A stretch of 39,136 nucleotides of DNA from Octopus sinensis (Eukaryota): positions 1-39,136 of the forward strand of contig NW_021835681.1 in NCBI RefSeq assembly GCF_006345805.1, given 5' to 3'. Each line of letters opens with the position of its first letter. Within the stretch, counting starts at the first letter, position 1. The notes below the pieces were generated by a model. It saw only the letters and a list, made by a program, of their open reading frames with translations, did no database searches and had not been told where the DNA came from. Below, one piece after another: positions 6,928 to 33,863 of the stretch. Made by a program: the position numbers and the translations under genes.

Positions 6928-7337
6928 GAGTGACTGTGTGGTAAGTAGCTTGCTTACGAACCACATGGTTCCGGGTTCAATCCCACTGCGTGGCACCTTG
7001 GGCAAGTATCTTTTACTATAGCCTCTGGCTGACCAAAGCCTTGTGAGGGGATTGGGTAGACAGAAACTGAAAGAAGCTCGTCATGTATATGTTTATGTAT
7101 GTGTGTGTGTGTGTGTATGTTTGTGTATCTGTATTTGCCCCCCACACACACACGCACACACATCGCTTGATAACCGATGATGGTGTGTTTACATCCCCGT
7201 AGCTTAGCGGTTCGGCAAAAGAGATCCGATAGAATAAGTACTAGGCTTACAAAGAATAAGTCCTGAGGTCGATTTACTCGACTAAAGGCGGTACTCCAGC
7301 ACGGCCGCGGTCAAATGACTGAAACAAGTAAAAGAAA
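6928..7337 (+). mobile_element. Full-length tRNA-derived SINE, family B (CORE-like central block)
   Basis: Head GAGTGACTGTGTGGTAAG, B-box GGGTTCAATCCC, central CCTTGGGCAAGT.TCTT.TACTATAGCC, tail GAAACAAGTAAAAGA. Near-identical copies at 15911 and 33461. Confidence 0.9.
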
Positions 7338-8923: not shown

Positions 8924-9520
8924 GTGAGCTGGCAGAAACGTTAGTACAACGGGCGAAATGCTTAGTGGTATTTCGTCTGCCGCAACGTTCTGAGTTCAAA
9001 TTCCGCCAAGGTCGACTTTTCTTTTTATCCTTTCGGGGTCGATTAAATAAGTACCAGTTACGTACGGGGTCGATATAATCGATTTAATCTGTTTGTCTGT
9101 CCTTGTTTGTCCCCTCTGTGTTTGGCCCCTTGTGGGCAGTAAAGAAATAGGTATTTTGTCTGCCGCTACGTTCTGAGTTCAAATTCCGCCGAGGTCGACT
9201 TTGCCTTTCATTCTTTCGGGGGTCGATTAAATAAGTACCAGTTATGCAATGGGGTCGATGTAATCGACTTAATCCGTTTGTCTGTCCTTGTTTGTCCTCT
9301 CTGTGTTTAGCCCCTTGTGGGTAGTAAAGAAATAGGTATTTTGCCTGCTGCTACATTCTGAGTTCAAATTCCGCCGAAGTCAACTTTGTCTTTCATCCTT
9401 TCGGGGTCGATAAATTAAGTACCAGTTACGCACTGGGGTCGATATAATCGATTTAAACTCTTTGTCTATCTTTGTTTTTCCTCTCTATGTTTAGCCGCTT
9501 GTGGGCAATAAAGAAATAAG
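8924..9520 (+). mobile_element. SINE family A head-to-tail trimer (one headed monomer plus two 185-bp headless monomers)
   Basis: Junctions AAAGAAATAG|GTATTTTG at 9150/9151 and 9335/9336. Last monomer ends CAATAAAGAAATAAG. Confidence 0.9.
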
Positions 9521-13562: not shown

Positions 13563-13605
<43 letters not shown>

Positions 13606-13657
13606 ATGGTGGTGGTGGTAGTACTTAGTAATAGTAGTAGTAGTAGTGGTGGTAAAG

Positions 13658-13695
<38 letters not shown>

Positions 13696-13809
13696 AATGG
13701 TGGTGGTAAAGGTAGAGTAGTAGTAGTGGTGGTGGTGGTGGTAGTAGTAGTAGTGGTGGTGGCTGCAGCGGTGGTGGTGGTGGTGGTGGTGGCAGCGGTG
13801 GTGGTGGCG

Positions 13810-13855
<46 letters not shown>

Positions 13856-13998
13856 TAGTAGTATAGTGGTGGTGGTGGTGGTGGTGATGGTTGCGGCGGC
13901 AGTGGTGGTGGCGGGAGTGATTGCGGAGATGGGGACGGTGGCAAAAATGATCGCAGTGAAGGCGATGGTGGCGGCGGCGGTGGCGGTGGCGGTGGTGA
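13547..13998. repeat. Trinucleotide mosaic (AGC, TAG, TGG, GCG)
   Basis: Direct inspection. Confidence 0.95.
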
Positions 13999-14419: not shown

Positions 14420-14590
14420 TACTCTAGGCACAAGGCCCGAAATTTTGGAGGAGGGTGCCAGTCGATTAGATCGACCCCAGTACGCACAACTCGTACTTAA
14501 GGATGAAAGGCAAAGTCGACCTCGGCGGAATTTGAACTCAGAACGTAAAGACAAACGAAATACAGCTAAACATTTCATCCGGCGTTCTAA
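14420..14590 (-). mobile_element. SINE family A, short-tail variant, head truncated
   Basis: GGATGAAAGGCAAAGTCGACCTCGGCGGAATTTGAACTCAGAACG on the plus strand. Confidence 0.8.
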
Positions 14591-14595
14591 TATTT

Positions 14596-14828
14596 CTTAT
14601 TTCTTTATTGCCCACAAGGGGCTAAACACAGAGGGGACAAACAAGGACAGACAAAGGGATTAAGTCGATTACATCGACCCCAGAGCGTAACTGGTACTTT
14701 ATTTAATCGACACCGAAAGGATGAAAGGCAAAGTCGACCTCGGCGGAATTTGAACTCAGAACGTAGCGGCAGACAAAATACCGCTAAGCATTTCTCCCGG
14801 CGTGCTAACGTTTCTGCCAGCTCGCCGT
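14596..14828 (-). mobile_element. Full-length SINE family A, long tail
   Basis: Minus-strand head GGCGAGCTGGCAGAAACGTTAGC. Tail CAATAAAGAAATAAGAAATA. Confidence 0.9.
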
Positions 14829-14888: not shown

Positions 14889-14959
14889 GGACTCGTCCCG
14901 GATTCGAACTCGGGAATTCCTACATACCAACTGAGAATCGTACCCTAGACGAACGAACT
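14889..14959 (-). pseudogene. Highly degenerate tRNA-Pro-derived pseudogene
   Basis: Collinear with the intact genes (GGACTCGTCCCGGATTCGAACTCGGG...GAGAATCGTACCCTAGACGAACG). Anticodon arm destroyed. Confidence 0.75.
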
Positions 14960-15133
14960 AACTGAAAAACATAAATCGATGATGTTAATTTCTCTGGGGT
15001 CAAGTATCGCTGTTTCACACTGAGCGATCCCAGTGTCATACTATATGGCATGTTGGTCAAGTGTCGTGTAGTATAGCCACGAACTGACCAATGGCTTGTG
15101 ATAGAAACTAGTAGATGAAAACCCTAAGCCACT

Positions 15134-15201
<68 letters not shown>

Positions 15202-15329
15202 CACACACACACACATGCATGTTTCTGACTAGGACATTCTTATTTGTTAATTTAACGTCGGGTATAAGAGTATTTTTCTTTTTAATCTGCAAACTGCGTC
15301 ATCAGGAGATGTATCATGAAAACACTTAA

Positions 15330-15373
15330 CTCTCGCACCCAAAGCGAGAATCATAATCCTAGACGAACGAGTC
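15330..15373 (-). pseudogene. Truncated tRNA-Pro(TGG), 5' half only
   Basis: CTCTCGCACCCAAAGCGAGAATCATAATCCTAGACGAACGAGTC on the plus strand. T arm and 3' acceptor strand absent. Confidence 0.8.
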
Positions 15374-15499
15374 AACTGTAGCAACCAGCTCAAGAATTAA
15401 CTGAAAAACATCAATCACTGAAGTTAATTATTGTGGCTCTGTAATAAGAAGTCGCGTGTATGCATGCATGTATGTATGCATGTATGTATGTATGTATGT

Positions 15500-15850
15500 A
15501 AGGAATGTGTCAAGTCCTCATTAAAGGACTGTGATATGCAGGGCGCTGACTGGGAGAACAATGCCTGTCATCGCCACAGATGGAGGAAGCAGGTTAAGGA
15601 GGGGATCGACACTTTTGAGAGAGCACGTATCCAGCATGAAGAACTTAAGCGAGCTGCGCGAAAGCGCACATCTCGTATAGTGAATGAGGAAAGCTTGGTC
15701 AGCAATGTGTGCAGTCGTGTATGCTTGTCAAGAGCAGGTCTCATTAGCCACCAACGGAGCCGCAAATGCAAAATATAAGTTAGTCCTAGAGCGCACAATG
15801 TTCCTGAAGGTCGGCAATGGTCTTCCTCGGTCACGAGTGGACGGCCATCA
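15500..15850 (+). mobile_element. RTE/BovB-like LINE 3' end embedded in (ATGT)n
   Basis: K..LK.C....WE..A..R..WR..V..G...FE..R......KR..RK ... CSRVCLSRAGLISHQR is the typical RTE C-terminus with zinc-finger remnant. Short 3' UTR, then (TGTA)n. Confidence 0.85.
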
Positions 15851-15910
15851 TGTATGTATGTATGTATGTATGTATGTATGAATTTAGCAGCAACGTTCGT
15901 CTCTACAGAT

Positions 15911-16279
15911 TTACTCTTTTACTCTTTTACTTGTTTCAGTCATTTGACTGCAACCATGCTGGAGCACCGCCTTTAGTCGAGCAAATCGACCCCGGGACTT
16001 ATTCTTTGTAAGCCCAGTACTTATTCTATCGGTCTCTTTTGCACCAGCATCGGTTGTCAGGCAATGCTAGGGGGACAAACACAGACACACAAACATATAC
16101 ACATATATATACATATATACGACAGGCTTCTTTCAGTTTCCGTCTACCAAATCCACTCACAAGGCATTGGTCGGCCCGGGGCTATAGCAGAAGACACTCG
16201 CCCAAGATGCCACGCAGTGGGATTGAACCCGGAACCATGTGGTTGGTTAGCAAGCTACTTACCACACAGCCACTCCTGC
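15911..16279 (-). mobile_element. SINE family B with an internal deletion of about 30 bp
   Basis: Minus-strand head GCAGGAGTGGCTGTGTGGTAAG and (AAGAGTA)-type tail. Lacks the CGAACCGCTAAG...AAACAC block present in the 33461 copy. Confidence 0.9.
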
Positions 16280-16817
16280 TGTAAATGTAAATTTATTTAC
16301 ATTGTTCTCCAAATCATCAGATATAAAGTCTAGGGTCATATTTTAAAAAGATAAATGGAAAATGCAAAAACATTCTTCTCAAGGAAATATGTTAAAAGAA
16401 AAAAGACCATTAGCGGTGCTCCAGCATGGCCACACACATTTGGCTGGAGCACACAAAGGAATAAAATGTTCGCCTGAGAAGGGAAACCGAGACCTTTTCC
16501 AACCTTGGAAAGGGACCTCTCGCCACCGGGGAAAGACTTTTCACACGAAGTGGGAGGTGAGGTGAACCAGTTGAAGTTGGGTTGAAACCACGTGCAGCTG
16601 GGGGTTAAATGTAATTTTAGTTGCTAGAATCTTTAGTAAAGTCTAACGTTATATATTGTGGCCTTTTTATAAATTTTATTTCCTCTTCTGGTAACTTTGT
16701 ATAATATCGGATATAATGCTGCTGGAAGAAAATTTAAAAACCACATCAGCATGTGTTTTTAATATGAATCCATGCTCCTCATACAAAATACATTATATAA
16801 AAAAAAAGGAGGGAATA

Positions 16818-16889
16818 GGGCACGTCCGGGATTCGAACCCGGGACCTCTCGCACCCAAAGCGAAAATCATTCCTCTAGACCAACGTGCC
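16818..16889 (-). tRNA. tRNA-Pro-TGG: tRNA-Pro(TGG), variant with compensatory A4:T69 pair
   Basis: GGCACGTTGGTCTAGAGGAATGATTTTCGCTTTGGGTGCGAGAGGTCCCGGGTTCGAATCCCGGACGTGCCC. Fully paired acceptor stem, T27:G43 wobble, T-run terminator 10 nt downstream. Confidence 0.8.
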
Positions 16890-16913
16890 GAGTTCTCTTA
16901 CGGGCTTAATGAG

Positions 16914-16924
16914 TCAACTGAAAA
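16914..16924 (-). promoter_or_regulatory. Conserved -35..-25 upstream motif TTTTCARKYGA (one example; present before all 9 full-length tRNA genes)
   Basis: Plus-strand TC(A/G)(A/C)(C/T)TGAAAA begins 23-25 nt beyond the tRNA 5' end at 16914, 17255, 18150, 19033, 19947, 20928, 21834, 22825, 23742. Function is inferred. Confidence 0.5.
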
Positions 16925-17158
16925 TTATAATTCGCTGGGGTTAAATGTGATTTTAGTTGAGAGAATCTATAGTAAAACCTATCATCGTATTCTTGTGGAA
17001 TCTTTATAAAATTTAATTTTCTCTTCTAGTTCAAGGTCTGAAATTAGACGTAATGTTGTAGGGAAAAAAATCTGAAAACTAAAACAGGATGGCTAATATG
17101 AATCAATGATCCTCATACAAAATATTTTATTAGTAGAGATATAAAAGAAAGCGAACGA

Positions 17159-17230
17159 GGGCTCGTCCGGGAGTCGAACCCGGGACCTCTCGCACCCGAA
17201 GCGAGAATCATACCTCTAGACCAACGAGCC
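17159..17230 (-). tRNA. tRNA-Pro-CGG: tRNA-Pro(CGG)
   Basis: 72-nt cloverleaf, anticodon loop TTCGGGT, T-loop TTCGACT. Confidence 0.93.
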
Positions 17231-17271
17231 GATTTAGTTACAGAGTCTAATAAATCAACTGAAAAACATGT

Positions 17272-17420
17272 GTGATACAGCAGTTCGCTACGCAATCCCG
17301 TGACTTTGGCTTTAGATCTGGTCTTGCTACACGTCATTTTGATAACGTGTCTTGTAGTGTAGACAAGGACTGACCAATGGTTGTCATAGAAAATGCTAGA
17401 CTAAAAATTCTAAGTAAATT
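17272..17420 (+). mobile_element. Fossil family B SINE fixed in the array spacer (homologues near 15020, 19045, 20940, 22838, 23790)
   Basis: The 19045 copy reads GTGTGATACAGAAGTTCGC...TTGGTCAAGTGTCTTGTAGTGTAGCCACGGACTGACCAATGG. This aligns with family B GTGTGGTAAG...TTGGGCAAGTGTCTTCTACTATAGCC..GG.CGACCAAAG. Confidence 0.7.
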
Positions 17421-17581
17421 CTCTAAACACACACACACACCTTTAACTGCAGTGTATGTTAAATTCAAGTCAGGCAAAAAGTTTTTTCTTTAAAATATGT
17501 GCAAACTTCTGTGGCATGTATTCTTCTTAATCTATATTTCTCACGAAGATATATCATTAAAACACTTTTAAAAATGAAAAA

Positions 17582-17653
17582 CGGATCGCACAGTTTTCGA
17601 TCCCCGGATCACTCGCATCCAAAGAGAGAATAACGCCCCTCGACCAACTAGCT
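17582..17653 (-). pseudogene. tRNA-Pro(TGG)-derived pseudogene
   Basis: 72 nt, collinear with intact genes. Broken acceptor stem and B-box. Confidence 0.85.
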
Positions 17654-18037
17654 AATTGTAACGTGATTATTTGTGGAATATGAATTGAGGATTTTCATTC
17701 TCTCCCCCAAGACGCTAAATTCAGCTATACTTTGCTCCAGACGGGCCGTTATGTATCTTGTTGCTCAAGTCATAATAAGTATGAAGCTAGAAGTGTATCT
17801 TGGGTACTGGTTTTGCAATTTCCTTATCAATGGTCCATAGATGTCCTCTTTCTCTTGTATATTTCTAACCACAATCGGACCCATGAGGTAGCTTATTTCC
17901 CCAACTGAGCATATCTATTCTTCGTGGTCCCACACAACGATATCTGACCGGTTGTGTTTAAAGTGGTGGCGGTTTTAAATTTCAAGTTTCAGCACGTTGT
18001 CTAATATGAATCCATGTTCCTCATACTACGTATATCT

Positions 18038-18048
18038 AAAAAAAAAAA
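18038..18048 (-). terminator. Pol III oligo(dT) terminator of the 18055 tRNA gene (equivalent runs precede 16818, 19853, 21739, 23646)
   Basis: Plus-strand A-run, read as a T-run a few nt 3' of the gene on the minus strand. Confidence 0.8.
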
Positions 18049-18054
18049 GTTAAT

Positions 18055-18126
18055 GGGCTCGCCCGGGATTCGAACCCGGGACCTCTCGCACCCAAAGCGA
18101 GAATCATACCCCTAGACCAACGAGCC
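18055..18126 (-). tRNA. tRNA-Pro-TGG: tRNA-Pro(TGG)
   Basis: GGCTCGTTGGTCTAGGGGTATGATTCTCGCTTTGGGTGCGAGAGGTCCCGGGTTCGAATCCCGGGCGAGCCC. T7:G66 wobble. Confidence 0.92.
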
Positions 18127-18936
18127 AACTGCGTTCGACGGTAAAGAAATCACTTGAAAATATGTATCAGTGAATTTAATTATTGTTGATGTGAAATCAA
18201 GTATTTGCATGTTTGTATGTATGTATATATTTATGTACGTGTGTGTGTATGTATGTGTGTATGCATGTATGTATGTATGTATGTATGTATGTATGTATGT
18301 ATGTATGTATGTATGTATGTATGTATGTATGTATGTATGTATGTATGTATGTATGTATGCATGTGTGTATGTATGTATGTATGTATGTATGTAGCAGCGA
18401 TATTCGTCTTAATAGATTTAATTATATCTTTCTCCTAATCATAAGACGTCAAGTCTGAGGGAATATTCTAAAAAGATAAACGGAAAAGGCAAAAGCATTC
18501 TTCTCAAGGAAATATGTTAAAATCGAAACATCAGTGACTGTGCTCCAGCATGGCCACACATATCAGGCTGGTGCACACAAGGCAATAAAAAGTTTGTCTA
18601 GGAGGAGAGACCATGATCTTTTTCACCCATTGAAAGGGACCGCTTGCACCCGAGGAAAGGTTTCTCAGACGTGGTGGGATGTAGGGGTGGACCAGTGGAA
18701 GCCGGGGTGGAAGCATTTACACTTGGGGTCTAAATGTAATTTTACTTGCTAGTATCTTTAGTAAAGTTTAACGTTGTATACTTGTGGCTTCCTTACAAAT
18801 TTAATTTCCTATTGTAGTTACTTGGATAATACTTGTGGGCAATTGGGAAAAATAATCTAAGACCACAACACTATGCTGTTTAATATGAATCCATGCTCTT
18901 TGTACAAAATACATTATAAGTAAAAGAAACAAATGA

Positions 18937-19008
18937 GGGCTCGTCCGGGATTCGAACCCGGGACCTCTCGCACCCGAAGCGAGAATCATACCTCTAGACC
19001 AACGAGCC
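18937..19008 (-). tRNA. tRNA-Pro-CGG: tRNA-Pro(CGG)
   Basis: Canonical 72-nt cloverleaf, anticodon CGG. Confidence 0.95.
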
Positions 19009-19376
19009 GATTTAGTTACAGAGTCTAATGAATCGACTGAAAAACGTGTGATACAGAAGTTCGCTACGCAATCCCGTGACTTTGGCTTTAGATCCGGTCT
19101 TGCTACACGTCATATTGGTCAAGTGTCTTGTAGTGTAGCCACGGACTGACCAATGGTTGTCATAGAAAATGCTCGACAAAAACTCTAAGTAAATTCTCTA
19201 AACCCACAGACAGACACACACACACACACCTCTAACTGCGGTGTATTTGTTAATTTAAAGCCAGACAAAAAGTGTTTTCTTTTAAATATGTACAAACTTC
19301 TGCGACATGTATTCTTCTTATTAATCTATATTTCTCTCGAAGATGTATCATTAAAACTTTTTATTAAAATAAAGAA

Positions 19377-19446
19377 CGGATCGTACAGGTTTCGATCCCG
19401 GGATCACTCGCACCCAAAGAGATAATAATGTCCCTCTCCACGAGCT
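19377..19446 (-). pseudogene. tRNA-Pro(TGG)-derived pseudogene
   Basis: Same slot as 17582. 70 nt, multiple stem-breaking changes. Confidence 0.85.
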
Positions 19447-19852
19447 ACCTGAAACGTGATTATTGTGTGAATATAAATTAAGGATTTTCATTCTCTTCCC
19501 CAAGACGCTAAATTCAGCTATACTTTGCTCCAGACGGGCCGTTATGTATCTTGTTGCTCAAGTCATAATAGGTATGAAGCTAGAAGTGTATCTTGGGTAC
19601 TGGTTTTGCAATTTCCTTATCAATGGTCCATAGATGTCCTCTTTCTCTTGTATTCTTCCAAACCGCAACCGGACCCATGAGGTAGCTGATTTCCACAACA
19701 GAGCATATCTATTCTTTGTGGTCCCACACAACGATATCTGACCGGTTGTATTTAAAGTGGTGGCGGTTTTAAATTTCAAGTTTCAGCACGTTGTCTAATA
19801 TGAATCCATGTTCCTCATACTACATATATCTATAAAAAAAAAAAAAGTTGAT

Positions 19853-19924
19853 GGGCTCGTCCGGGACTCGAACCCGGGACCACTCGCACCCTAAGCGAGA
19901 ATCATACCTCTAGACCAACGAGCC
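19853..19924 (-). tRNA. tRNA-Pro-AGG: tRNA-Pro(AGG)
   Basis: Anticodon loop TTAGGGT, variable loop TGGTC, T-loop TTCGAGT. All stems intact. Confidence 0.93.
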
Positions 19925-20072
19925 AACTGCGTTCGACGCAAAGAAATCAATTGAAAATGTATCAGTGAATTTAATTATTGTTGATGTGAAATCAAGTATT
20001 TGCATGTTTGTATGTATGTATATATTTATGTACGTGTGTGTGTTTTATGTGTGTATGTATTATGTATGTATG

Positions 20073-20103
<31 letters not shown>

Positions 20104-20831
20104 TGTATGTATGAATGTATGTATGAATGTTGTATTATGTTGTGTATGTATGTATGTATGTATGTATGTATGTATGCATGTATGTATGCATGTATGAATG
20201 TATGTATGATGTATGTATGTATGTATGTATGTATGTATGTATGCATGTATGTATGCATGTGTGTATGTTTGTATGTATGTAGCAGCGATATTCGTCTTAA
20301 TAGATTTAATTATACTTTTCTCCTAATCATAAGACGTAAAGTCTGGAGGAATATTTTAAAAAGATAAACGGAAAAGGCAAAAGCATTCTTCTCAAGGAAA
20401 TATGTTAAAATCGAAACACCAGTGACTGTGCTCCAGCATGGCCACACATATCAGGCTGGTTCACACAAAGCAATAAAAAGTTTGTCTAGGAGGAGAGGCC
20501 GTGATCTTTTGCACTCATTGAAAGGGACCGCTTGCACCCGAGGAAAGGTTTCTCAGACTTGGTGGGATGTAAGGGTGGACAGTGGAAGCCGGGGTGGAAG
20601 CCGGGGTGGAAGCCCTTGCACTTGGGGTTTAAATGTAATTTTACTTGCTAGAATCTTAGTAAAGGGTAACGTTGTGTACTTGTGGCCTCTTTACAATTTA
20701 ATTTCCTATTGTAGTTACTTGGATAATACTTGTGGGCAATTGGGAAAAATAATCTAAGACCACAACACTATGTTGTTTAATATGAATCCATGCTCTTTGT
20801 ACAAAACATTATAAGTAAAAGAAACAAAAGA

Positions 20832-20903
20832 GGGCTCGTCCGGGATTCGAACCCGGACCTCCTCGCACCCGAAGCGAGAATCATACCTCTAGACCAACGA
20901 GCC
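20832..20903 (-). tRNA. tRNA-Pro-CGG: tRNA-Pro(CGG) with altered variable loop (GAGGT), possibly an assembly error
   Basis: One G lost and one C gained on the plus strand relative to 18937 and 22729. Length and stems preserved. Confidence 0.75.
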
Positions 20904-21266
20904 GATTTAGTTACAGAGTCTAATGAATCGACTGAAAAACGTGTGATACAGAAGTTCGCTACGCAATCCCGTGACTTTGGCTTTAGATCTGGTCTTGCTA
21001 CACGTCATATTGGTCAAGTGTCTTGTAGTGTAGCCACGGACTGACCAATGGTTGTCATAGAAAATGCTCGACAAAAACTCTAAGTAAATTCTCTAAACCC
21101 ACAGACAGACACACACACACCTCTAACTGCGGTGTATTTGTCAATTTAAAGGCAGACAAAAAGTGTTTTCTTTTAAATATGTGCAAACTTCTGTGGCATG
21201 TATTCTTCTTATTAATCTATATTTCTCTCGAAGATGTATCATTAAAACTTTTTATTAAAATAAGAA

Positions 21267-21338
21267 CGGATCGTACAGGTTTCGATCCCGGGATCACACG
21301 CACCCAAAGAGATAATAATGTCCCTCGACCAACGAGCT
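21267..21338 (-). pseudogene. tRNA-Pro(TGG)-derived pseudogene
   Basis: AGCTCGTTGGTCGAGGGACATTATTATCTCTTTGGGTGCGTGTGATCCCGGGATCGAAACCTGTACGATCCG. Mismatched 1:72 and 3:70, T54A. Confidence 0.85.
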
Positions 21339-21738
21339 ACCTGAAACGTGATTATTTGTGGATATAAATTAAGGATTTTCATTCTCTTCCCCAAGACGCT
21401 AAATTCAGCTATACTTTGCTCCAGACGGGCCGTTATGTATCTTGTTGCTCAAGTCATAATAGGTATGAAGCTAGAAGTGTATCTTGGGTACTGGTTTTGC
21501 AATTTCCTATCAATGGTCCATAGATCCTCTTTCTCTGTTATTCTTCCAAACCACAACCGGACCCATGAGGTAGCTGATTTCCACAACAGAGCATATCTAT
21601 TCTTTGTGGTCCCACACAACGATATCTGACCGGTTGTATTTAAAGTGGTGGCGGTTTTAAATTTCAAGTTTCAGCACGTTGTCTATATGAATCCATGTTC
21701 CTCATATACTACATATCTATAAAAAAAAAAAAGTTGAT

Positions 21739-21810
21739 GGGCTCGTCCGGGACTCGAACCCGGGACCACTCGCACCCTAAGCGAGAATCATACCTCTAGA
21801 CCAACGAGCC
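21739..21810 (-). tRNA. tRNA-Pro-AGG: tRNA-Pro(AGG)
   Basis: Identical to the 19853 gene. Confidence 0.93.
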
Positions 21811-22728
21811 AACTGCGTTCGACGGCAAAGAAATCAATTGAAAATATGTATCAGTGAATTTAATTATTGTTGATGTGAAATCAAGTATTTGCATGTTTGT
21901 ATGTATGTATATATTTATGTACGTGTGTGTGTATTTATGTGTGTATGTATGTATGTATGTATGTATGTATGTATGTATGTATGTATGTATGTATGTATGT
22001 ATGAATGTATGTATGAATGTATGTATGTATGTATGTATGTATGTATGTATGTATGTATGTATGTATGCATGTATGTATGCATGTATGAATGTATGTATGA
22101 ATGTATGTATGTATGTATGTATGTATGTATGTATGCATGTATGTATGCATGTGTGTATGTTTGTATGTATGTAGCAGCGATATTCGTCTTAATAGATTTA
22201 ATTATACTTTTCTCCTAATCATAAGACGTAAAGTCTGGAGGAATATTTTAAAAAGATAAACGGAAAAGGCAAAAGCATTCTTCTCAAGGAAATATGTTAA
22301 AATCGAAACACCAGTGACTGTGCTCCAGCATGGCCACACATATCAGGCTGGTTCACACAAAGCAATAAAAAGTTTGTCTAGGAGGAGAGGCCGTGATCTT
22401 TTGCACTCATTGAAAGGGACCGCTTGCACCCGAGGAAAGGTTTCTCAGACGTGGTGGGATGTAAGGGTGGACCAGTGGAAGCCGGGGTGGAAGCCGGGGT
22501 GGAAGCCCTTGCACTTGGGGTTTAAATGTAATTTTACTTGCTAGAATCTTTAGTAAAGGGTAACGTTGTGTACTTGTGGCCTCTTTACAAATTTAATTTC
22601 CTATTGTAGTTACTTGGATAATACTTGTGGGCAATTGGGAAAAATAATCTAAGACCACAACACTATGTTGTTTAATATGAATCCATGCTCTTTGTACAAA
22701 ATACATTATAAGTAAAAGAAACAAAAGA

Positions 22729-22800
22729 GGGCTCGTCCGGGATTCGAACCCGGGACCTCTCGCACCCGAAGCGAGAATCATACCTCTAGACCAACGAGCC
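22729..22800 (-). tRNA. tRNA-Pro-CGG: tRNA-Pro(CGG)
   Basis: Identical to the 18937 gene. Confidence 0.95.
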
Positions 22801-23164
22801 GATTTAGTTACAGAGTCTAATGAATCGACTGAAAAACGTGTGATACAGAAGTTCGCTACGCAATCCCGTGACTTTGGCTTTAGATCTGGTCTTGCTACAC
22901 GTCATATTGGTCAAGTGTCTTGTAGTGTAGCCACGGACTGACCAATGGTTGTCATAGAAAATGCTCGACAAAAACTCTAAGTAAATTCTCTAAACCCACA
23001 GACAGACACACACACACCTCTAACTGCGGTGTATTTGTCAATTTAAAGGCAGACAAAAAGTGTTTTCTTTTAAATATGTGCAAACTTCTGTGGCATGTAT
23101 TCTTCTTATTAATCTATATTTCTCTCGAAGATGTATCATTAAAACTTTTTATTAAAATAAAGAA

Positions 23165-23236
23165 CGGATCGTACAGGTTTCGATCCCGGGATCACACGCA
23201 CCCAAAGAGATAATAATGTCCCTCGACCAACGAGCT
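23165..23236 (-). pseudogene. tRNA-Pro(TGG)-derived pseudogene
   Basis: Identical to the 21267 pseudogene. Confidence 0.85.
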
Positions 23237-23645
23237 ACCTGAAACGTGATTATTTGTGGAATATAAATTAAGGATTTTCATTCTCTTCCCCAAGACGCTA
23301 AATTCAGCTATACTTTGCTCCAGACGGGCCGTTATGTATCTTGTTGCTCAAGTCATAATAGGTATGAAGCTAGAAGTGTATCTTGGGTACTGGTTTTGCA
23401 ATTTCCTTATCAATGGTCCATAGATGTCCTCTTTCTCTTGTATTCTTCCAAACCACAACCGGACCCATGAGGTAGCTGATTTCCACAACAGAGCATATCT
23501 ATTCTTTGTGGTCCCACACAACGATATCTGACCGGTTGTATTTAAAGTGGTGGCGGTTTTAAATTTCAAGTTTCAGCACGTTGTCTAATATGAATCCATG
23601 TTCCTCATACTACATATATCTATAAAAAAAAAAAAAAAAGTTGAT

Positions 23646-23717
23646 GGGCTCGTCCGGGATTCGAACCCAGGACCTCTCGCACCCTAAGCGAGAATCATAC
23701 CCCTAGACCAACGAGCC
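23646..23717 (-). tRNA. tRNA-Pro-AGG: tRNA-Pro(AGG)
   Basis: Anticodon AGG, D-loop AGGGGTA, T50:G64 wobble in the T stem. Confidence 0.9.
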
Positions 23718-24111
23718 GACTTCGGAAGAGTTGCTAATGAATCGACTGAAAAACATAATTCACTAACGTTAACTTCTCTAGGTAAAGCCATGGCTGTGTG
23801 ATTAGAAGTTGTCTACGCAATCTTACGATTTCGGTCTTACTATACAGCATCTTGCTCAAGTGTCTTGTACTTTGTCATGAACTGACCAATGGCTTGTGGC
23901 GAAAACTGGTAGACAGAAACACTAAATAAATTGTCTATACTCACCTACACAAGCTCACACGTACCTTTGACCACGACATCCGTATTTGTTAAGTAAAGTA
24001 ATGGTTTTTTTTTTAAATAACATCTGCAAAATACAACTACCTGTAGGCTATTTATTAACACATATTTCTCATATATATTTCATTAAATCATATTTAAAAA
24101 GAAAAAGATAA

Positions 24112-24139
24112 CGGTTCGTCTAGGATTCGTACCCATGAC
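24112..24139 (-). pseudogene. 3' remnant of a tRNA-Pro pseudogene at the array edge
   Basis: CGGTTCGTCTAGGATTCGTACCCATGAC, preceded by a spacer homologous to the one before the pseudogene slot. Confidence 0.55.
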
Positions 24140-25312: not shown

Positions 25313-25727
25313 AGCGGTGAACTGGCAGAATTGTAAGCACGCCGAGCAAAATGCTTAGCAGTATTTCGTCTGCCGCTACGTTCTGAGTTCAAATTCCGCC
25401 GAGGTTGACTTTGCCTTTCATCCTTTCGGGGTCGATAAATTAAGTACCAGTTACGCACTGGGGTCGATATAATCGACTTAATCCCTTTGTCTGTCCTTGT
25501 TTGTCCTCTCTGTGTTTAGCTCCTTGAGGGTAGTAAAGAAATAGGTATTTCGTCTGCCGTTACGTTCTGAGTTCAAATTCCGCCGAGGTCGACTTTGCCT
25601 TTCATCCTTTCAGGGTCGATAAATTAAGTACCAGTTACGCACTGGGGTCAATATAATCGACTTTATACATTTGTCTGTCCTTCTTTGTCCTCTCTGTGTT
25701 TATCCCCTTGTGGGTAGTAAAGATATA
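25313..25727 (+). mobile_element. SINE family A dimer flanked by a perfect 16-bp TSD
   Basis: GGTACTATGACCTCAA at 25297-25312 and 25728-25743. Internal junction AAAGAAATAG|GTATTTCG at 25544/25545. Confidence 0.95.
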
Positions 25728-26271
25728 GGTACTATGACCTCAAGAATGTGAGACGCAAATTTTACCACGGCAGGAATTAAACACGGAACACTAAGCAAAC
25801 TGCACGGCAGTTTATTCAATGCCCTAGCGAGTGTGCCAAACGTCGCTTTCGTCTCTGTTGAAGGCGGCAAAATCTAACATAGTTACTTCAGAGGATTATA
25901 AGACACTTAAAAGCCATGATATTAAGTCGAAGCTATTCAAAGCTATGCGGTCCTTTTCTAACCGTTTAAGCAATAAAACTGTTTTTCAGTGCAAGATAAA
26001 ACAGACATTCCTAAACACTTTTTCCCACGTTCCACGGCTAATAATAATGAATATAAGCGTCTCGACTGTAAATTGGTCGTAAATCTCGAAACTCTGCAAA
26101 GAACGAAAGGTGTTCTCCGATGTTATTGATTTCCTAAATTGGTAAACAAAACAATAAACTCGCAAAGTATGATGGCGTAGACTAGTGACTCTCTCTCTCC
26201 CCTCCTTCTCCCTTTCTCATTCTCTTTCTCTCGACAGCGGGCATCAACTGTGTTCATAACGTGTGAATGTA

Positions 26272-26321
<50 letters not shown>

Positions 26322-26368
26322 TAGTGATAATAATAATAATGATAATAATAATAATGATAATAATAATG

Positions 26369-26408
<40 letters not shown>

Positions 26409-26512
26409 CAACAACAACAACAATAATAATAATAATAATAATAATGATAATAATAATAATAATGATAGTGATAATAATAATAATGATAATAATAATAATG
26501 ATAATAATAATG

Positions 26513-26546
<34 letters not shown>

Positions 26547-26593
26547 TAGTGATAATAATAATAATGATAATAATAATAATGATAATAATAATG

Positions 26594-26630
<37 letters not shown>

Positions 26631-26677
26631 TAGTGATAATAATAATAATGATAATAATAATAATGATAATAATAATG

Positions 26678-26714
<37 letters not shown>

Positions 26715-26721
26715 CAACAAC

Positions 26722-26762
<41 letters not shown>

Positions 26763-26968
26763 TAGTGATAATAATAATAATGATAATAAATAATGATAAT
26801 ATAATGATAATAATAATAATAATAATAATACAATAATAATAATAACAACAACAACAACAATAATAATAATAATAATAATAATAATATAATAATAATAATA
26901 ATAATATAATAATAATAATGATAGTGATAATAATAATAATGATAATAATAATAATGATAATAATAATG

Positions 26969-27008
<40 letters not shown>

Positions 27009-27142
27009 TGTGATAATAATAATAATGATAATAATAATAATGATAATAATAATGATATAATAATAATATAATAATAATAATATAATAATAATAATAAATA
27101 ATAATGATAATAATAATGATAATAATAATGATAATAATAATG

Positions 27143-27182
<40 letters not shown>

Positions 27183-27389
27183 TAGTGATAAAATAATAAT
27201 GATATAATAATAATGATAATAATAATGATAATAATAATAATATAATAATAATAATAATAATAATATAATAATAAAATAATAATAATAATGATAATAATAA
27301 TAATAATAATAATAATGAATAATAATAATAATGATAATAATGATAGTGAAATAATAATAATGATAATAATAATAATGATAATAATAATG

Positions 27390-27420
<31 letters not shown>

Positions 27421-27535
27421 CAACAACAACAATAATAATAATAATAATAATAATAAATAATAATAATAATAATATAATAATAATGATAGTGATAATAATA
27501 ATAATGATAATAATAATAATGATAATAATATAATG

Positions 27536-27575
<40 letters not shown>

Positions 27576-27682
27576 TAGTGATAATAATAATAATGATAAT
27601 AATAATAATGATAATAATAATGATATAATAATAATAATAATAATAAATAATAATAATAATAATAATAATGATAATAATAATG

Positions 27683-27716
<34 letters not shown>

Positions 27717-27839
27717 TAGTGATAATAATAATAATTATAATAATAATAATGATAATAATAATGATAATAAATAATAATATAATAATAATAATGATAGTGA
27801 TAATAATAATAATGATAATAAATAATGATAATAATAATG

Positions 27840-27882
<43 letters not shown>

Positions 27883-27929
27883 TAGTGATAATAATAATAA
27901 TGATAATAATAATAATGATAATAATAATG

Positions 27930-27972
<43 letters not shown>

Positions 27973-28017
27973 TAGTGATAATAATAATAATGATAATAAT
28001 AACAACACAACAACAAC

Positions 28018-28051
<34 letters not shown>

Positions 28052-28113
28052 TAATAATAATATATAATAATGATAATAATAATAATGATCATAATAATAA
28101 TGATAATAATATG

Positions 28114-28163
<50 letters not shown>

Positions 28164-28498
28164 GATAGTGATAATAATAATAATGATAATAATAATAATG
28201 ATAATAATATGATAAATAATAATAATAATAATAATAATAATGATAGTGATAATAATAATAATGATAATAATAATAATGATAATAATAATGATATAATAAT
28301 AATAATAATAATAATATAATAATAACAAAAAACAACAACAACAATAATAATAATATAATAATAATAATATAATAATAATAATATAATGATAGTGATAATA
28401 ATAATAATGATAATAATAATAATGATAATAATAATTGATAATAATAATAAATAATAATAATAATAATAATAATAACAACAACAACAACAATAATAATA

Positions 28499-28546
<48 letters not shown>

Positions 28547-28588
28547 TAGTGATAATATAATAATGATAATAATAATAATGATAATAAT

Positions 28589-28633
<45 letters not shown>

Positions 28634-28643
28634 CAACAACAAC

Positions 28644-28684
<41 letters not shown>

Positions 28685-28692
28685 TAATAATA
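26272..28692. repeat. 2.4-kb (AAT)n-based satellite with higher-order structure
   Basis: Recurrent GATAGTGAT(AAT)4GAT(AAT)4GAT(AAT)3GAT cassette and periodic (CAA)n blocks. Confidence 0.97.
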
Positions 28693-28758
28693 AGGGTTTA
28701 TCATAGCAGCTCAAGATCAATGTCAATGCCTACGCATTGTAAACCACACTATAATTTG

Positions 28759-33460: not shown

Positions 33461-33863
33461 ACTCTTTTACTTGTTTCAGTCATGTGACTGTGGCCATGCT
33501 GGAGCACCGCTTTTAGTCGAGCAAATCGACCCAGGACTTATTCTTTGTAAGCCTAGTACTTATTCTATCGGTCACTTTTGCCGAACCGCTAAGTTACGGA
33601 GACGTAAACACACCAGTATCGGTTGCCAAGCGATGTTGGGGGGACAAACACAGACACACAAACATACACACAGCCATACATATATACATATGCATATATA
33701 CGACGGGCTTCTATCAGTTTCCATCTACCAAATCTACTCACAAGGCTTTGGTCGGCCCGGGGCTATAGTAGAAGACACTTGCCCAAGGTGCCATGCAGTG
33801 GGACTGAACCTGGAACCAAGTGGTTGGTAAGCAGACTTCTTACCACACAGCCACTCTTACGCC
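33461..33863 (-). mobile_element. Full-length SINE family B
   Basis: Reverse complement of 6928-7337 along its length. Confidence 0.9.

What the first reader, a model, noticed from the sequence alone, without database searches (positions are those of the whole stretch)
16290..23717. Higher-order tandem array that co-amplifies proline isoacceptor tRNA genes, a dead tRNA and a microsatellite
Seen: about 4 units of 1.8-1.9 kb. Each carries Pro-CGG, a TGG-derived pseudogene and a Pro-AGG (or TGG) gene on one strand, and units are separated by (ATGT)n tracts. The cluster as a whole covers AGG, TGG and CGG, the full standard eukaryotic Pro set. Most of the unit-length difference (about 1790 vs 1890 bp) is (ATGT)n length (about 185 vs 280 bp). 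Monomer spacings of 341, 423 and 473 bp and shared 3' flanks (AATATGAATCCATG.TC) indicate the unit was built from older single-tRNA monomers. Established: STR-spaced tRNA arrays occur in Entamoeba, and tandem tRNA units occur in some vertebrates. Inference: this is a single-amino-acid tRNA satellite under concerted evolution, possibly copy-number variable. I do not know of a description in cephalopods.
Basis: partly seen in the sequence, partly recalled or inferred. Interest (0 to 1): 0.8.

Follow-up and report, generated by a model that had tools for sequence, protein, structure and literature searches.

The report
Tandem cluster of proline tRNA genes
A 9-kb stretch carries nine intact and seven decayed proline-tRNA genes laid out as repeated 1.9-kb units; this is an ordinary kind of locally duplicated tRNA gene cluster, but a tidy example of how such clusters grow, change anticodon and decay.

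Summary
All nine intact tRNA-Pro genes lie on the minus strand (3 AGG, 4 CGG, 2 TGG), with four in-unit dead copies and (ATGT)n tracts at a 1.8-1.9 kb period.

New findings:
- The cluster is larger than reported, about 14889-24139. Decayed older units sit on both sides, and two foreign insertions interrupt the low side.
- The well-homogenised block (92-100% identity) runs from inside gene A1 (23717) to the 3' end of gene D3 (17159), so both edges fall at tRNA genes.
- All monomers share about 55 nt of 5' flank and 75 nt of 3' flank. The three anticodons therefore arose by changes at the first anticodon base in copies of one ancestral gene.
- The genes are 70/72 identical to mammalian tRNA-Pro. 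They have a canonical B box, T-run terminators and no stem-breaking change.
- The microsatellite is unremarkable: simple repeats cover 27% of the surrounding window.

This is a small cluster whose two ends are both visible, not a satellite. Comparable arrays are published for human 1q23.3, Entamoeba and Arabidopsis. Expression, true copy number and the source organism could not be tested, and no comparative DNA was reachable. Verdict: a new member of a known kind, of low to moderate interest.

The parts
14889..24139 (-). Whole tRNA-Pro cluster including decayed outer units
   Evidence: Self-BLAST, segment alignments and relic alignments.
17159..23717 (-). Homogenised block of about 3.5 units, 92-100% identical. 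It runs from inside gene A1 to the 3' end of gene D3.
   Evidence: Sliding identity, segment identities and unit identities A-B 98.1%, A-C 96.4%, B-C 96.7%.
23646..23717 (-). A1, tRNA-Pro(AGG). A hybrid monomer with an old slot-3-type 5' flank and a young slot-1-type 3' flank. T at gene index 49 gives a G-U pair.
23166..23235 (-). A2, dead tRNA-Pro(TGG)-derived pseudogene (slot 2)
   Evidence: 56/70 identical to Pro-TGG. No RF00005 hit at E<=10.
22729..22800 (-). A3, tRNA-Pro(CGG), identical to C3
21893..22173 (.). (ATGT)n, 281 nt, with the same compound interruption pattern as the tract at 20004-20281
21739..21810 (-). B1, tRNA-Pro(AGG), identical to C1. Private variants T43 and G58 (gene index).
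21268..21337 (-). B2, dead slot-2 pseudogene
20832..20903 (-). B3, tRNA-Pro(CGG) with a +G/-C shift in the variable loop. The cloverleaf is still intact.
20004..20281 (.). (ATGT)n, 278 nt
19853..19924 (-). C1, tRNA-Pro(AGG)
19378..19445 (-). C2, dead slot-2 pseudogene
18937..19008 (-). C3, tRNA-Pro(CGG)
18209..18393 (.). (ATGT)n, 185 nt, a simpler tract lacking the internal ATGA/ATGC block
18055..18126 (-). D1, tRNA-Pro(TGG), in the slot that holds AGG in units A-C (anticodon shift). G65 gives a G-U pair.
17583..17652 (-). D2, dead slot-2 pseudogene
17159..17230 (-). D3, tRNA-Pro(CGG). Identity to the younger units drops from 92-98% to about 78% right after its 3' end.
16818..16889 (-). D4, tRNA-Pro(TGG) variant, an extra 341-nt monomer. 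It has a compensatory 4:68 T-A to A-T change plus C26T (G-U).
16288..16817 (-). Old-layer spacer downstream of D4, 79-85% identical to the spacers of the young units
15930..16275 (+). SINE-like interspersed element inserted into the old spacer
   Evidence: Two further copies in the window, at 33470-33856 and 7328-6928, 76-81% identical.
15850..15913 (.). Remainder of the old spacer plus (ATGT)7.8
   Evidence: 84% identical to 18357-18420 (family D2).
15501..15849 (+). Foreign 349-nt insert lying between two (ATGT)n tracts (15457-15500 and 15850-15880). Its identity is unknown.
   Evidence: No Pfam hit and no homologue.
15330..15371 (-). E1, truncated Pro-TGG 5' part (39/42) with a slot-1-type 5' flank, fused to a slot-2-type 3' flank
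15035..15136 (-). Old copy of the interval upstream of slot 3 (80% identical)
14889..14956 (-). E3, degenerate tRNA-Pro relic (53/69). Its 3' flank is cut by a 185-nt-family repeat.
23796..24114 (-). Old copy (77.8% identical) of the slot-2-to-slot-3 interval, lying upstream of A1
24113..24139 (-). Z, relic of a tRNA 3' third (21/27)
22817..22835 (-). Upstream motif TTTTCAGTYGAYTYATTAR at -35 to -17. Also at 23734-23752, 20920-20938, 19025-19043, 17247-17265 and 16906-16924.
   Evidence: Six matches against 0.01 expected. Alignment.
22475..22507 (.). 12-mer GTGGAAGCCGGG x2.8 in the spacer (also at 20582-20614). Units C and D have one copy fewer.

Best explanation
This is a locally amplified cluster of nuclear (cytosolic) tRNA-Pro genes.

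Read on the minus strand, the compound unit is: 5' flank X, tRNA(AGG or TGG), interval W, dead tRNA(TGG), interval Y, tRNA(CGG), spacer S, (ACAT)n.

Shown by the sequence:
- About 3.5 units are 92-100% identical. They sit inside older copies at 70-85% identity that carry insertions, deletions and decayed tRNAs.
- All monomers share a core of about 200 nt (55 nt upstream, the gene, 75 nt downstream), so they descend from one tRNA-Pro monomer.
- The live copies differ at the first anticodon base (T, C or A).

Inferred:
- The cluster grows and is homogenised by unequal crossing-over or gene conversion between misaligned units.
- The tRNA genes, the only sequence kept above 90% identity in every monomer, serve as exchange points. 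This would explain why both edges of the young block fall at genes A1 and D3.
- Each intact gene is transcribed on its own by RNA polymerase III from its internal A and B boxes and stops at the T-run just downstream. Together they would supply all three proline isoacceptors.
- The slot-2 copy is a dead passenger and the microsatellite a copied bystander.
For: - Nine genes pass Rfam's gathering score by 20-28 bits and ARAGORN.
- The CGG gene is 70/72 identical to the mammalian tRNA-Pro sequence printed in PMC5159642.
- The B box GGTTCGAATCC is present and no CCA is encoded. T4 to T16 runs lie within 3-13 nt downstream of every intact gene.
- All 140 stem cells pair in the seven distinct sequences, with one compensatory change and three changes to G-U. 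The slot-2 copies have broken stems and get no Rfam hit.
- In the old layers, intact genes are far better kept than their flanks. A1 has 3/72 differences against 68/306 in its flank (Fisher p=1.6e-4). D4 has 5/72 against 93/501 (p=0.012). The relics Z, E1 and E3 in similarly old flanks have decayed.
- Block edges at genes: A1 has a slot-3-type 5' flank at 77.8% and a slot-1-type 3' flank at 98-100%. After D3, identity drops from 92-98% to 77.8%.
- Monomer flank homology is shown.
- The A and B microsatellites share one interruption pattern.
Against: - There are no expression or occupancy data.
- Within the young layer, the genes are not significantly better conserved than their flanks (6/144 against 47/824, p=0.55). 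Constraint is therefore only visible in the old layers. Gene conversion from other Pro genes could mimic it.
- Clustered tRNA genes can be silent, as the Arabidopsis P and SYY clusters are in seedlings (PMC12308677).
- Slot-1 genes B1 and C1 carry three changes found in neither A1 nor D1, so a single simple A1 x D1 crossover does not explain them.
- Two block edges coinciding with genes has a chance probability of roughly 0.01-0.02 (my estimate). That is suggestive, not proof.
- Unit B has about 11 private 1-2-nt deletions, so assembly quality is uncertain.
Confidence: 0.72

Rival explanations
1. The block is a neutral, transcriptionally silent segmental duplication. The tRNA genes look intact only because the duplications are recent or because they are overwritten by conversion. 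They contribute little or nothing to the tRNA pool, like epigenetically silenced tDNA clusters.
For: The young-layer constraint test is not significant (p=0.55). One of three slots is already dead and is still copied. Arabidopsis proline and Ser/Tyr tDNA clusters are silent in most tissues (PMC12308677). Cephalopod genomes can hold tens to thousands of tRNA-like loci per isotype (PMC6962438), so nine genes may be dispensable.
Against: A1 and D4 sit in flanks that are 19-22% diverged, yet they keep perfect cloverleaves with only 3-5 changes, all structure-preserving. Neighbouring relics of similar age are destroyed. Terminator T-runs and the B box are kept in every intact copy.
Confidence: 0.2
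2. The copy number, or some of the units, is an assembly artefact: over-expansion, collapse or mis-joining of a repeat by the assembler.
For: Unit B carries about 11 private 1-2-nt deletions and a +G/-C shift in gene B3, which looks like consensus noise. Repeats of 1.9 kb at 96-98% identity are hard to assemble.
Against: The units are not identical copies. They differ by unit-specific substitutions that form a gradient from D through C to A and B. They also differ in 12-mer copy number and in microsatellite architecture. The outer relics with independent insertions show a long history of real duplication.
Confidence: 0.1
3. The repeats are retroposed tRNA-derived elements (SINE copies) that happened to land side by side.
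For: The window is full of SINE-like elements, one of them inside the cluster.
Against: Homology between copies extends through 1.6 kb of non-tRNA sequence at a constant period and in a single orientation. The monomers share a 5' flank as well as a 3' flank, with no A-rich tail and no target-site duplications. No copies of the unit occur elsewhere in the window.
Confidence: 0.02
4. The main role of the cluster is architectural, as a chromatin boundary or Pol III factory anchor, rather than tRNA supply. This has been proposed for the human 1q23.3 tRNA tandem repeat.
For: By analogy only (PMC4041453).
Against: Nothing in the sequence speaks to it.
Confidence: 0.05

Closest known systems
Human chromosome 1q23.3 tRNA variable-number tandem repeat (PMC4041453)
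   Same: A head-to-tail compound unit with several tRNA genes. Adjacent units are about 98% identical. Differences between units are SNPs plus length changes in simple repeats inside the unit. TE fragments lie inside or beside it.
   Different: The human unit is 7.3 kb and GC-rich, has five tRNA genes of several amino acids and occurs in 9-43 copies, with demonstrated instability and CTCF binding. Here the unit is 1.9 kb, proline only, with about 3.5 young copies. Copy-number variation and chromatin state are untested.
Entamoeba tRNA gene arrays (PMC2652664)
   Same: Tandem units with up to 5 tRNA genes, with short tandem repeats between genes that vary in number.
   Different: In Entamoeba almost all tRNA genes are organised this way, in long arrays making up over 10% of the genome, with complex STRs between adjacent genes. 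Here there is one short cluster, with one plain microsatellite per unit in a genome region that is itself 27% microsatellite.
Arabidopsis proline tDNA 'P clusters' and the Ser/Tyr 'SYY' array (PMC12308677)
   Same: Clusters of tRNA genes for a single amino acid (proline), and a compound tandem unit (Ser-Tyr-Tyr).
   Different: This is a plant lineage. Those clusters are silenced in most tissues, with cell-type-specific reactivation shown for SYY. No expression information exists here.
Drosophila tRNA clusters with anticodon shifts (PMC2997554)
   Same: Clusters mixing anticodons of one amino acid are explained by single-base changes at the first anticodon position in duplicated genes.
   Different: The Drosophila inference comes from orthologue sets across species. 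Here it comes from paralogues within one array that share flanks (TGG in D1 against AGG in A1, B1 and C1 in the same slot).
Xenopus laevis 3.18-kb tDNA repeat (from my own knowledge, not checked here)
   Same: A tandemly repeated compound unit carrying several tRNA genes in an animal.
   Different: That unit holds eight genes for different amino acids and is repeated on the order of a hundred times or more.

Membership tests
Eukaryotic nuclear tRNA-Pro genes (Pol III type 2) | Cloverleaf or covariance-model score above the curated threshold, with an NGG anticodon | tested here: met
   RF00005 scores of 50.6-56.9 bits against a gathering score of 29. ARAGORN calls Pro with AGG, CGG or TGG. 100% of stem cells pair.
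Eukaryotic nuclear tRNA-Pro genes (Pol III type 2) | Internal B box GGTTCGANNCC and an A-box region, with no encoded 3' CCA | tested here: met
   GGTTCGAATCC (or GGTTCGAGTCC, GGTTCGACTCC) at gene index 51-61. The genes end in ...GAGCCC followed by non-CCA flank. Read directly from the sequence.
Eukaryotic nuclear tRNA-Pro genes (Pol III type 2) | Oligo-T terminator shortly downstream | tested here: met
   T11-T16 at +7 (slot 1), TTTT at +3 (slot 3; in C3 the first TTTT is at +12), TTTT at +13 (D3) and T9 at +11 (D4).
Eukaryotic nuclear tRNA-Pro genes (Pol III type 2) | Sequence close to known metazoan tRNA-Pro | tested here: met
   70/72 identical to the mammalian tRNA-Pro(CGG) sequence printed in PMC5159642.
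Eukaryotic nuclear tRNA-Pro genes (Pol III type 2) | Transcribed and aminoacylated | not testable with these tools
   No expression data are available.
Tandem tRNA gene arrays (Entamoeba, human 1q23.3, Xenopus type) | Head-to-tail repetition of a unit holding two or more tRNA genes, with high identity between units | tested here: met
   Periods of 1907, 1886 and 1798 nt. Identities A-B 98.1%, A-C 96.4% and B-C 96.7%.
Tandem tRNA gene arrays (Entamoeba, human 1q23.3, Xenopus type) | Many copies (tens or more) forming a long array | tested here: not met
   There are about 3.5 young units plus relics. Both ends of the cluster lie inside the 39-kb window, with no further tRNA genes. This holds subject to the assembly being correct.
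Tandem tRNA gene arrays (Entamoeba, human 1q23.3, Xenopus type) | Copy-number polymorphism between individuals | not testable with these tools
   No reads and no other assemblies could be reached.
Satellite DNA with higher-order repeats | Long homogeneous arrays (tens of kb to Mb) of a compound unit built from diverged monomers | tested here: not met
   The compound unit built from three paralogous monomers is present. However, the homogeneous part is only 6.6 kb and is bounded by decayed copies.
tRNA-derived SINE | Dispersed copies with a tail and target-site duplications, with homology limited to the element | tested here: not met
   Homology spans the whole 1.6-kb unit at a fixed period. 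No copies occur elsewhere in the window.

The most novel reading that the evidence does not exclude
The cluster could be a copy-number-variable, separately regulated reserve of proline tRNAs. It might be switched on in particular tissues or stages that make proline-rich proteins, as the Arabidopsis Ser/Tyr array is in root-cap cells. Its tandem structure would let the animal retune the ratio of AGG, CGG and TGG isoacceptors quickly, through exchange between units and single-base anticodon switches. The conserved upstream motif TTTTCAGTYGAYTYATTAR would then be a lineage-specific Pol III control element.
Probability: 0.1. Interest if true: 0.55.

Novelty: new member of a known kind. Interest (0 to 1): 0.27.

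Why it matters
The locus is of modest importance. It captures several stages of tRNA gene family turnover in one 9-kb stretch:
- birth by duplication of a monomer;
- assembly of a compound unit;
- amplification and homogenisation;
- anticodon switching between isoacceptors in the same slot;
- death of one slot;
- decay and invasion by mobile elements at the edges.

The live copies also carry distinct single-base tags, so expression could be measured gene by gene with tRNA sequencing. The kind of structure is nonetheless well known in other eukaryotes.

Tried and rejected
- **Comparative DNA.** Two metagenome scans found nothing: one with the tRNA 3' end plus the 3' flank motif, one with the upstream motif plus the tRNA start. 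Exact look-ups of four ORFs of the window were not on record. Protein homology searches with the spacer ORF 20422-20754 and the insert ORF 15431-15775 gave no hits. As a result, the organism, synteny and copy number in other assemblies could not be addressed.
- **Protein domains.** A Pfam scan of ten ORFs, including unit ORFs and the foreign insert, found nothing. The ORFs in the unit are chance ORFs.
- **First constraint test, withdrawn.** I compared intact genes against the rest of unit D (p down to 3e-5). I rejected it because unit D is a patchwork of a 92-98% layer and a 77-85% layer. It was redone layer by layer.
- **Sub-threshold Rfam hits.** Hits of mir-297, mir-466 and similar families on (ATGT)n score 24-61 bits against gathering scores of 85-90. 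They are low-complexity artefacts.
- **Bacterial signal scan.** The bacterial-type promoter and terminator scan found fewer sites than in shuffles. It is irrelevant to Pol III genes.
- **Simple crossover model.** A single A1 x D1 crossover producing B1 and C1 does not fit, because B1 and C1 have three private changes.
- **Literature.** Searches for a cephalopod or mollusc nuclear tRNA array returned only mitochondrial work and genome papers that merely count tRNA loci.

Full report
**Observation**

ARAGORN finds nine tRNA-Pro genes in the window, all on the minus strand between 16818 and 23717. Rfam's tRNA model finds the same nine at 50.6-56.9 bits, against a gathering score of 29, and nothing else in the window reaches any family's threshold. 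Reading 5' to 3' on the minus strand, the anticodons are AGG, CGG, AGG, CGG, AGG, CGG, TGG, CGG, TGG.

Tandem Repeats Finder gives (ATGT)n tracts of 281, 278 and 185 nt at 21893-22173, 20004-20281 and 18209-18393. Self-BLAST gives a 3658-nt alignment at 96.2% with an offset of 1885 nt.

Four further tRNA-like copies keep the TTTGGGT loop (TTTGGAT in the unit D copy) and match Pro-TGG in 53-56 of 70 columns. They lie at 23235-23166, 21337-21268, 19445-19378 and 17652-17583. They are missed by ARAGORN and get no tRNA hit even at E<=10.

**Anatomy**

I name the units A to D from high to low coordinates, and the slots 1 (AGG or TGG), 2 (dead) and 3 (CGG). On the minus strand a unit reads: 5' flank X (about 80 nt), slot-1 gene, W (about 400 nt), slot-2 pseudogene, Y (about 370 nt), slot-3 gene, spacer S (about 540 nt, with a 12-mer repeated 2-3 times), then (ACAT)n.

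Without the microsatellite, units A, B and C are 96.4-98.1% identical. Unit C shares several variants with D, so similarity falls off with distance: D, then C, then A and B.

The A and B microsatellites have the same compound interruption pattern. C has a simpler tract that lacks an internal block of about 100 nt. This accounts for the 1798-nt period against the 1886- and 1907-nt periods.

**The cluster is larger and older than reported**

Unit D is a patchwork. From X through gene D3 it is 92-97.5% identical to unit C. Immediately after D3 the identity falls to 77.8%. The extra monomer D4 with its spacer is 79-85% identical.

Below that, in order, lie:
- a SINE-like insert at 15930-16275, with two more copies elsewhere in the window;
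- the end of the old spacer with a short (ATGT)n at 15850-15913;
- a 349-nt foreign insert flanked by (ATGT)n on both sides;
- a truncated Pro-TGG (15371-15330, 39/42);
- an old copy of Y (15136-15035, 80%);
- a degenerate tRNA (14956-14889, 53/69), whose 3' flank is cut by another interspersed repeat.

Above A1 lie an old copy of Y (24114-23796, 77.8%) and a relic of a tRNA 3' third (24139-24113, 21/27). No further tRNA genes or unit copies occur in the remaining 30 kb. Both ends of the cluster are therefore in view, and the whole spans about 9.3 kb.

**Where the young block ends**

Gene A1 has a 5' flank of the slot-3 type at old-layer divergence. Its 3' flank is the slot-1 type and is 98-100% identical to those of B1 and C1. 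At the other end, the drop in identity occurs at the 3' end of D3.

Both edges of the homogenised block (23717 to 17159) thus coincide with tRNA genes, which make up only about 11% of a unit. I estimate the chance of this at roughly 0.01-0.02. I take it as suggestive evidence that exchanges between misaligned copies start or end in the tRNA genes, which are the only segments kept above 90% identity in every monomer. This is an inference. A single simple crossover between A1 and D1 does not reproduce B1 and C1, which carry three private changes.

**Origin from one monomer, and anticodon switching**

Alignments of representatives of each lineage show homology from about -55 to +75 around the gene in slots 1 and 3, in D4 and in the relics. 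Slot 2 and relic E3 keep the start of the same upstream motif but have lost the bases between it and the gene.

Gene bodies differ at 0-9 of 72 positions. A3 equals C3, and B1 equals C1. The same slot holds TGG in unit D and AGG in units A-C. The dead copies, D4 and E1 are TGG. Slot 3 is CGG.

The three isoacceptors are therefore first-anticodon-base variants of one duplicated gene. This is the mechanism proposed for mixed-anticodon clusters in Drosophila (PMC2997554).

**Are the genes functional?**

Shown:
- The CGG gene is 70/72 identical to a mammalian tRNA-Pro sequence printed in PMC5159642.
- The B box is canonical, no CCA is encoded, and each intact gene is followed within 3-13 nt by at least four T.
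- All stem positions pair in all seven distinct sequences. D4 carries a compensatory T-A to A-T change at 4:68, and three other stem changes give G-U pairs. With so little variation, this is not significant against shuffles (64/500).

Constraint: my first test was confounded by the layered structure, and I withdraw it. Within the young layer the genes are no better conserved than their flanks (6/144 against 47/824, p=0.55). In the old layers they are: A1 has 3/72 differences against 68/306 in its flank (p=1.6e-4), and D4 has 5/72 against 93/501 (p=0.012). Relics of similar age are wrecked.

Selection, or conversion from other Pro genes, has therefore kept slots 1 and 3, and D4, in working form. 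Slot 2 drifts at least as fast as its flanks. Transcription itself is inferred, not shown, and silent tRNA clusters exist (PMC12308677).

**The microsatellite**

Simple repeats of period 6 or less cover 27% of the window outside the cluster, at 1.5 tracts per kb, and 9.5% inside it. (ATGT)n also occurs elsewhere in the window, for example at 1533-1861. Octopus genomes are reported to be about 15% simple repeats (PMC6279123). A tract inside a 1.9-kb unit is therefore expected, and its co-amplification needs no special explanation.

**Comparison with known systems**

Tandem tRNA units with variable internal simple repeats and about 98% identity between units are described for human 1q23.3 (7.3 kb, five genes, 9-43 copies; PMC4041453). 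Entamoeba has them on a far larger scale (PMC2652664). Proline-only clusters and a compound Ser-Tyr-Tyr array exist in Arabidopsis. A survey of eukaryotes found same-amino-acid, same-orientation tRNA pairs to be common in several lineages (PMC2888827).

This locus meets the defining features of nuclear tRNA-Pro genes and of a tandem compound tRNA unit. It does not meet the 'many copies, long array' feature of the classic arrays or of satellites.

**Novelty and limits**

Five literature searches found no description of a nuclear tRNA cluster in cephalopods or molluscs. Cephalopod genome papers only count tRNA loci, for example 46 to 2,541 per isotype in the giant squid.

I could not verify the organism. 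No eukaryotic DNA collection was available, and every route to comparative sequence failed. Unit B's private 1-2-nt deletions, including a +G/-C shift in gene B3, may be assembly noise.

Verdict: a real, well-structured but ordinary tRNA gene cluster. It is a new member of a known kind, of low to moderate interest.

Noticed in passing
window 26272-28693: A 2.4-kb (AAT)n tract of about 814 copies at 85% purity. GC is 0.11 in 26001-28000.
   Followed up: no
window 8967-9518, 25361-25731, 14460-14827: A 185-nt element with a tRNA-like T-arm motif forms short tandems (3 copies, 2 copies, and an inverted pair). One block abuts the lowest tRNA relic and cuts its 3' flank.
   Followed up: partly
window 15930-16275, 33470-33856, 6928-7328: A SINE-like element of 350-400 nt with a tRNA-like head occurs in three copies, 76-81% identical. 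One copy is inserted in the old spacer of the cluster.
   Followed up: partly
window 15501-15849: A 349-nt foreign insert lies exactly between two (ATGT)n tracts, as if it had landed in the unit's microsatellite. Its 115-aa ORF (15431-15778, + strand) has no Pfam hit and no homologue. Whether it is the 3' end of a retrotransposon that targets this repeat is untested.
   Followed up: partly
window 22817-22835, 23734-23752, 20920-20938, 19025-19043, 17247-17265, 16906-16924 (minus strand): The motif TTTTCAGTYGAYTYATTAR sits at -35 to -17 of every slot-3-type gene (6 matches against 0.01 expected). It is 21/21 identical between the A1 and A3 flanks, although the rest of that flank is only about 78% identical. 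It is a possible upstream Pol III element.
   Followed up: partly
window 22433-22416, 20541-20524, 18653-18636, 16527-16512 (minus strand): The spacer of each unit holds a 16-18-nt match to tRNA-Pro index 32-49 (35-49 in unit D); in units A-C it includes a CGG anticodon loop. It exceeds all 300 shuffles. It may be a fourth, very old tRNA relic in each unit.
   Followed up: partly
window 20282-21892 (unit B): There are about 11 private 1-2-nt deletions relative to units A, C and D, plus a +G/-C shift in the variable loop of gene B3. These may be consensus errors of the assembly rather than real variants.
   Followed up: partly
window 18217-22125, within the (ATGT)n tracts: Sub-threshold Rfam hits to mir-297, mir-466, mir-1277 and similar families (24-61 bits against gathering scores of 81-101) are low-complexity artefacts.
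   Followed up: yes
window 13563-13911: Adjacent (AGT)n and (GTG)n tracts of about 350 nt produce long spurious ORFs.
   Followed up: no
whole window: No ORF of 90 aa or more outside simple repeats has a Pfam match. The window appears to be gene-poor, repeat-rich intergenic or intronic DNA with 31-43% GC.
   Followed up: partly
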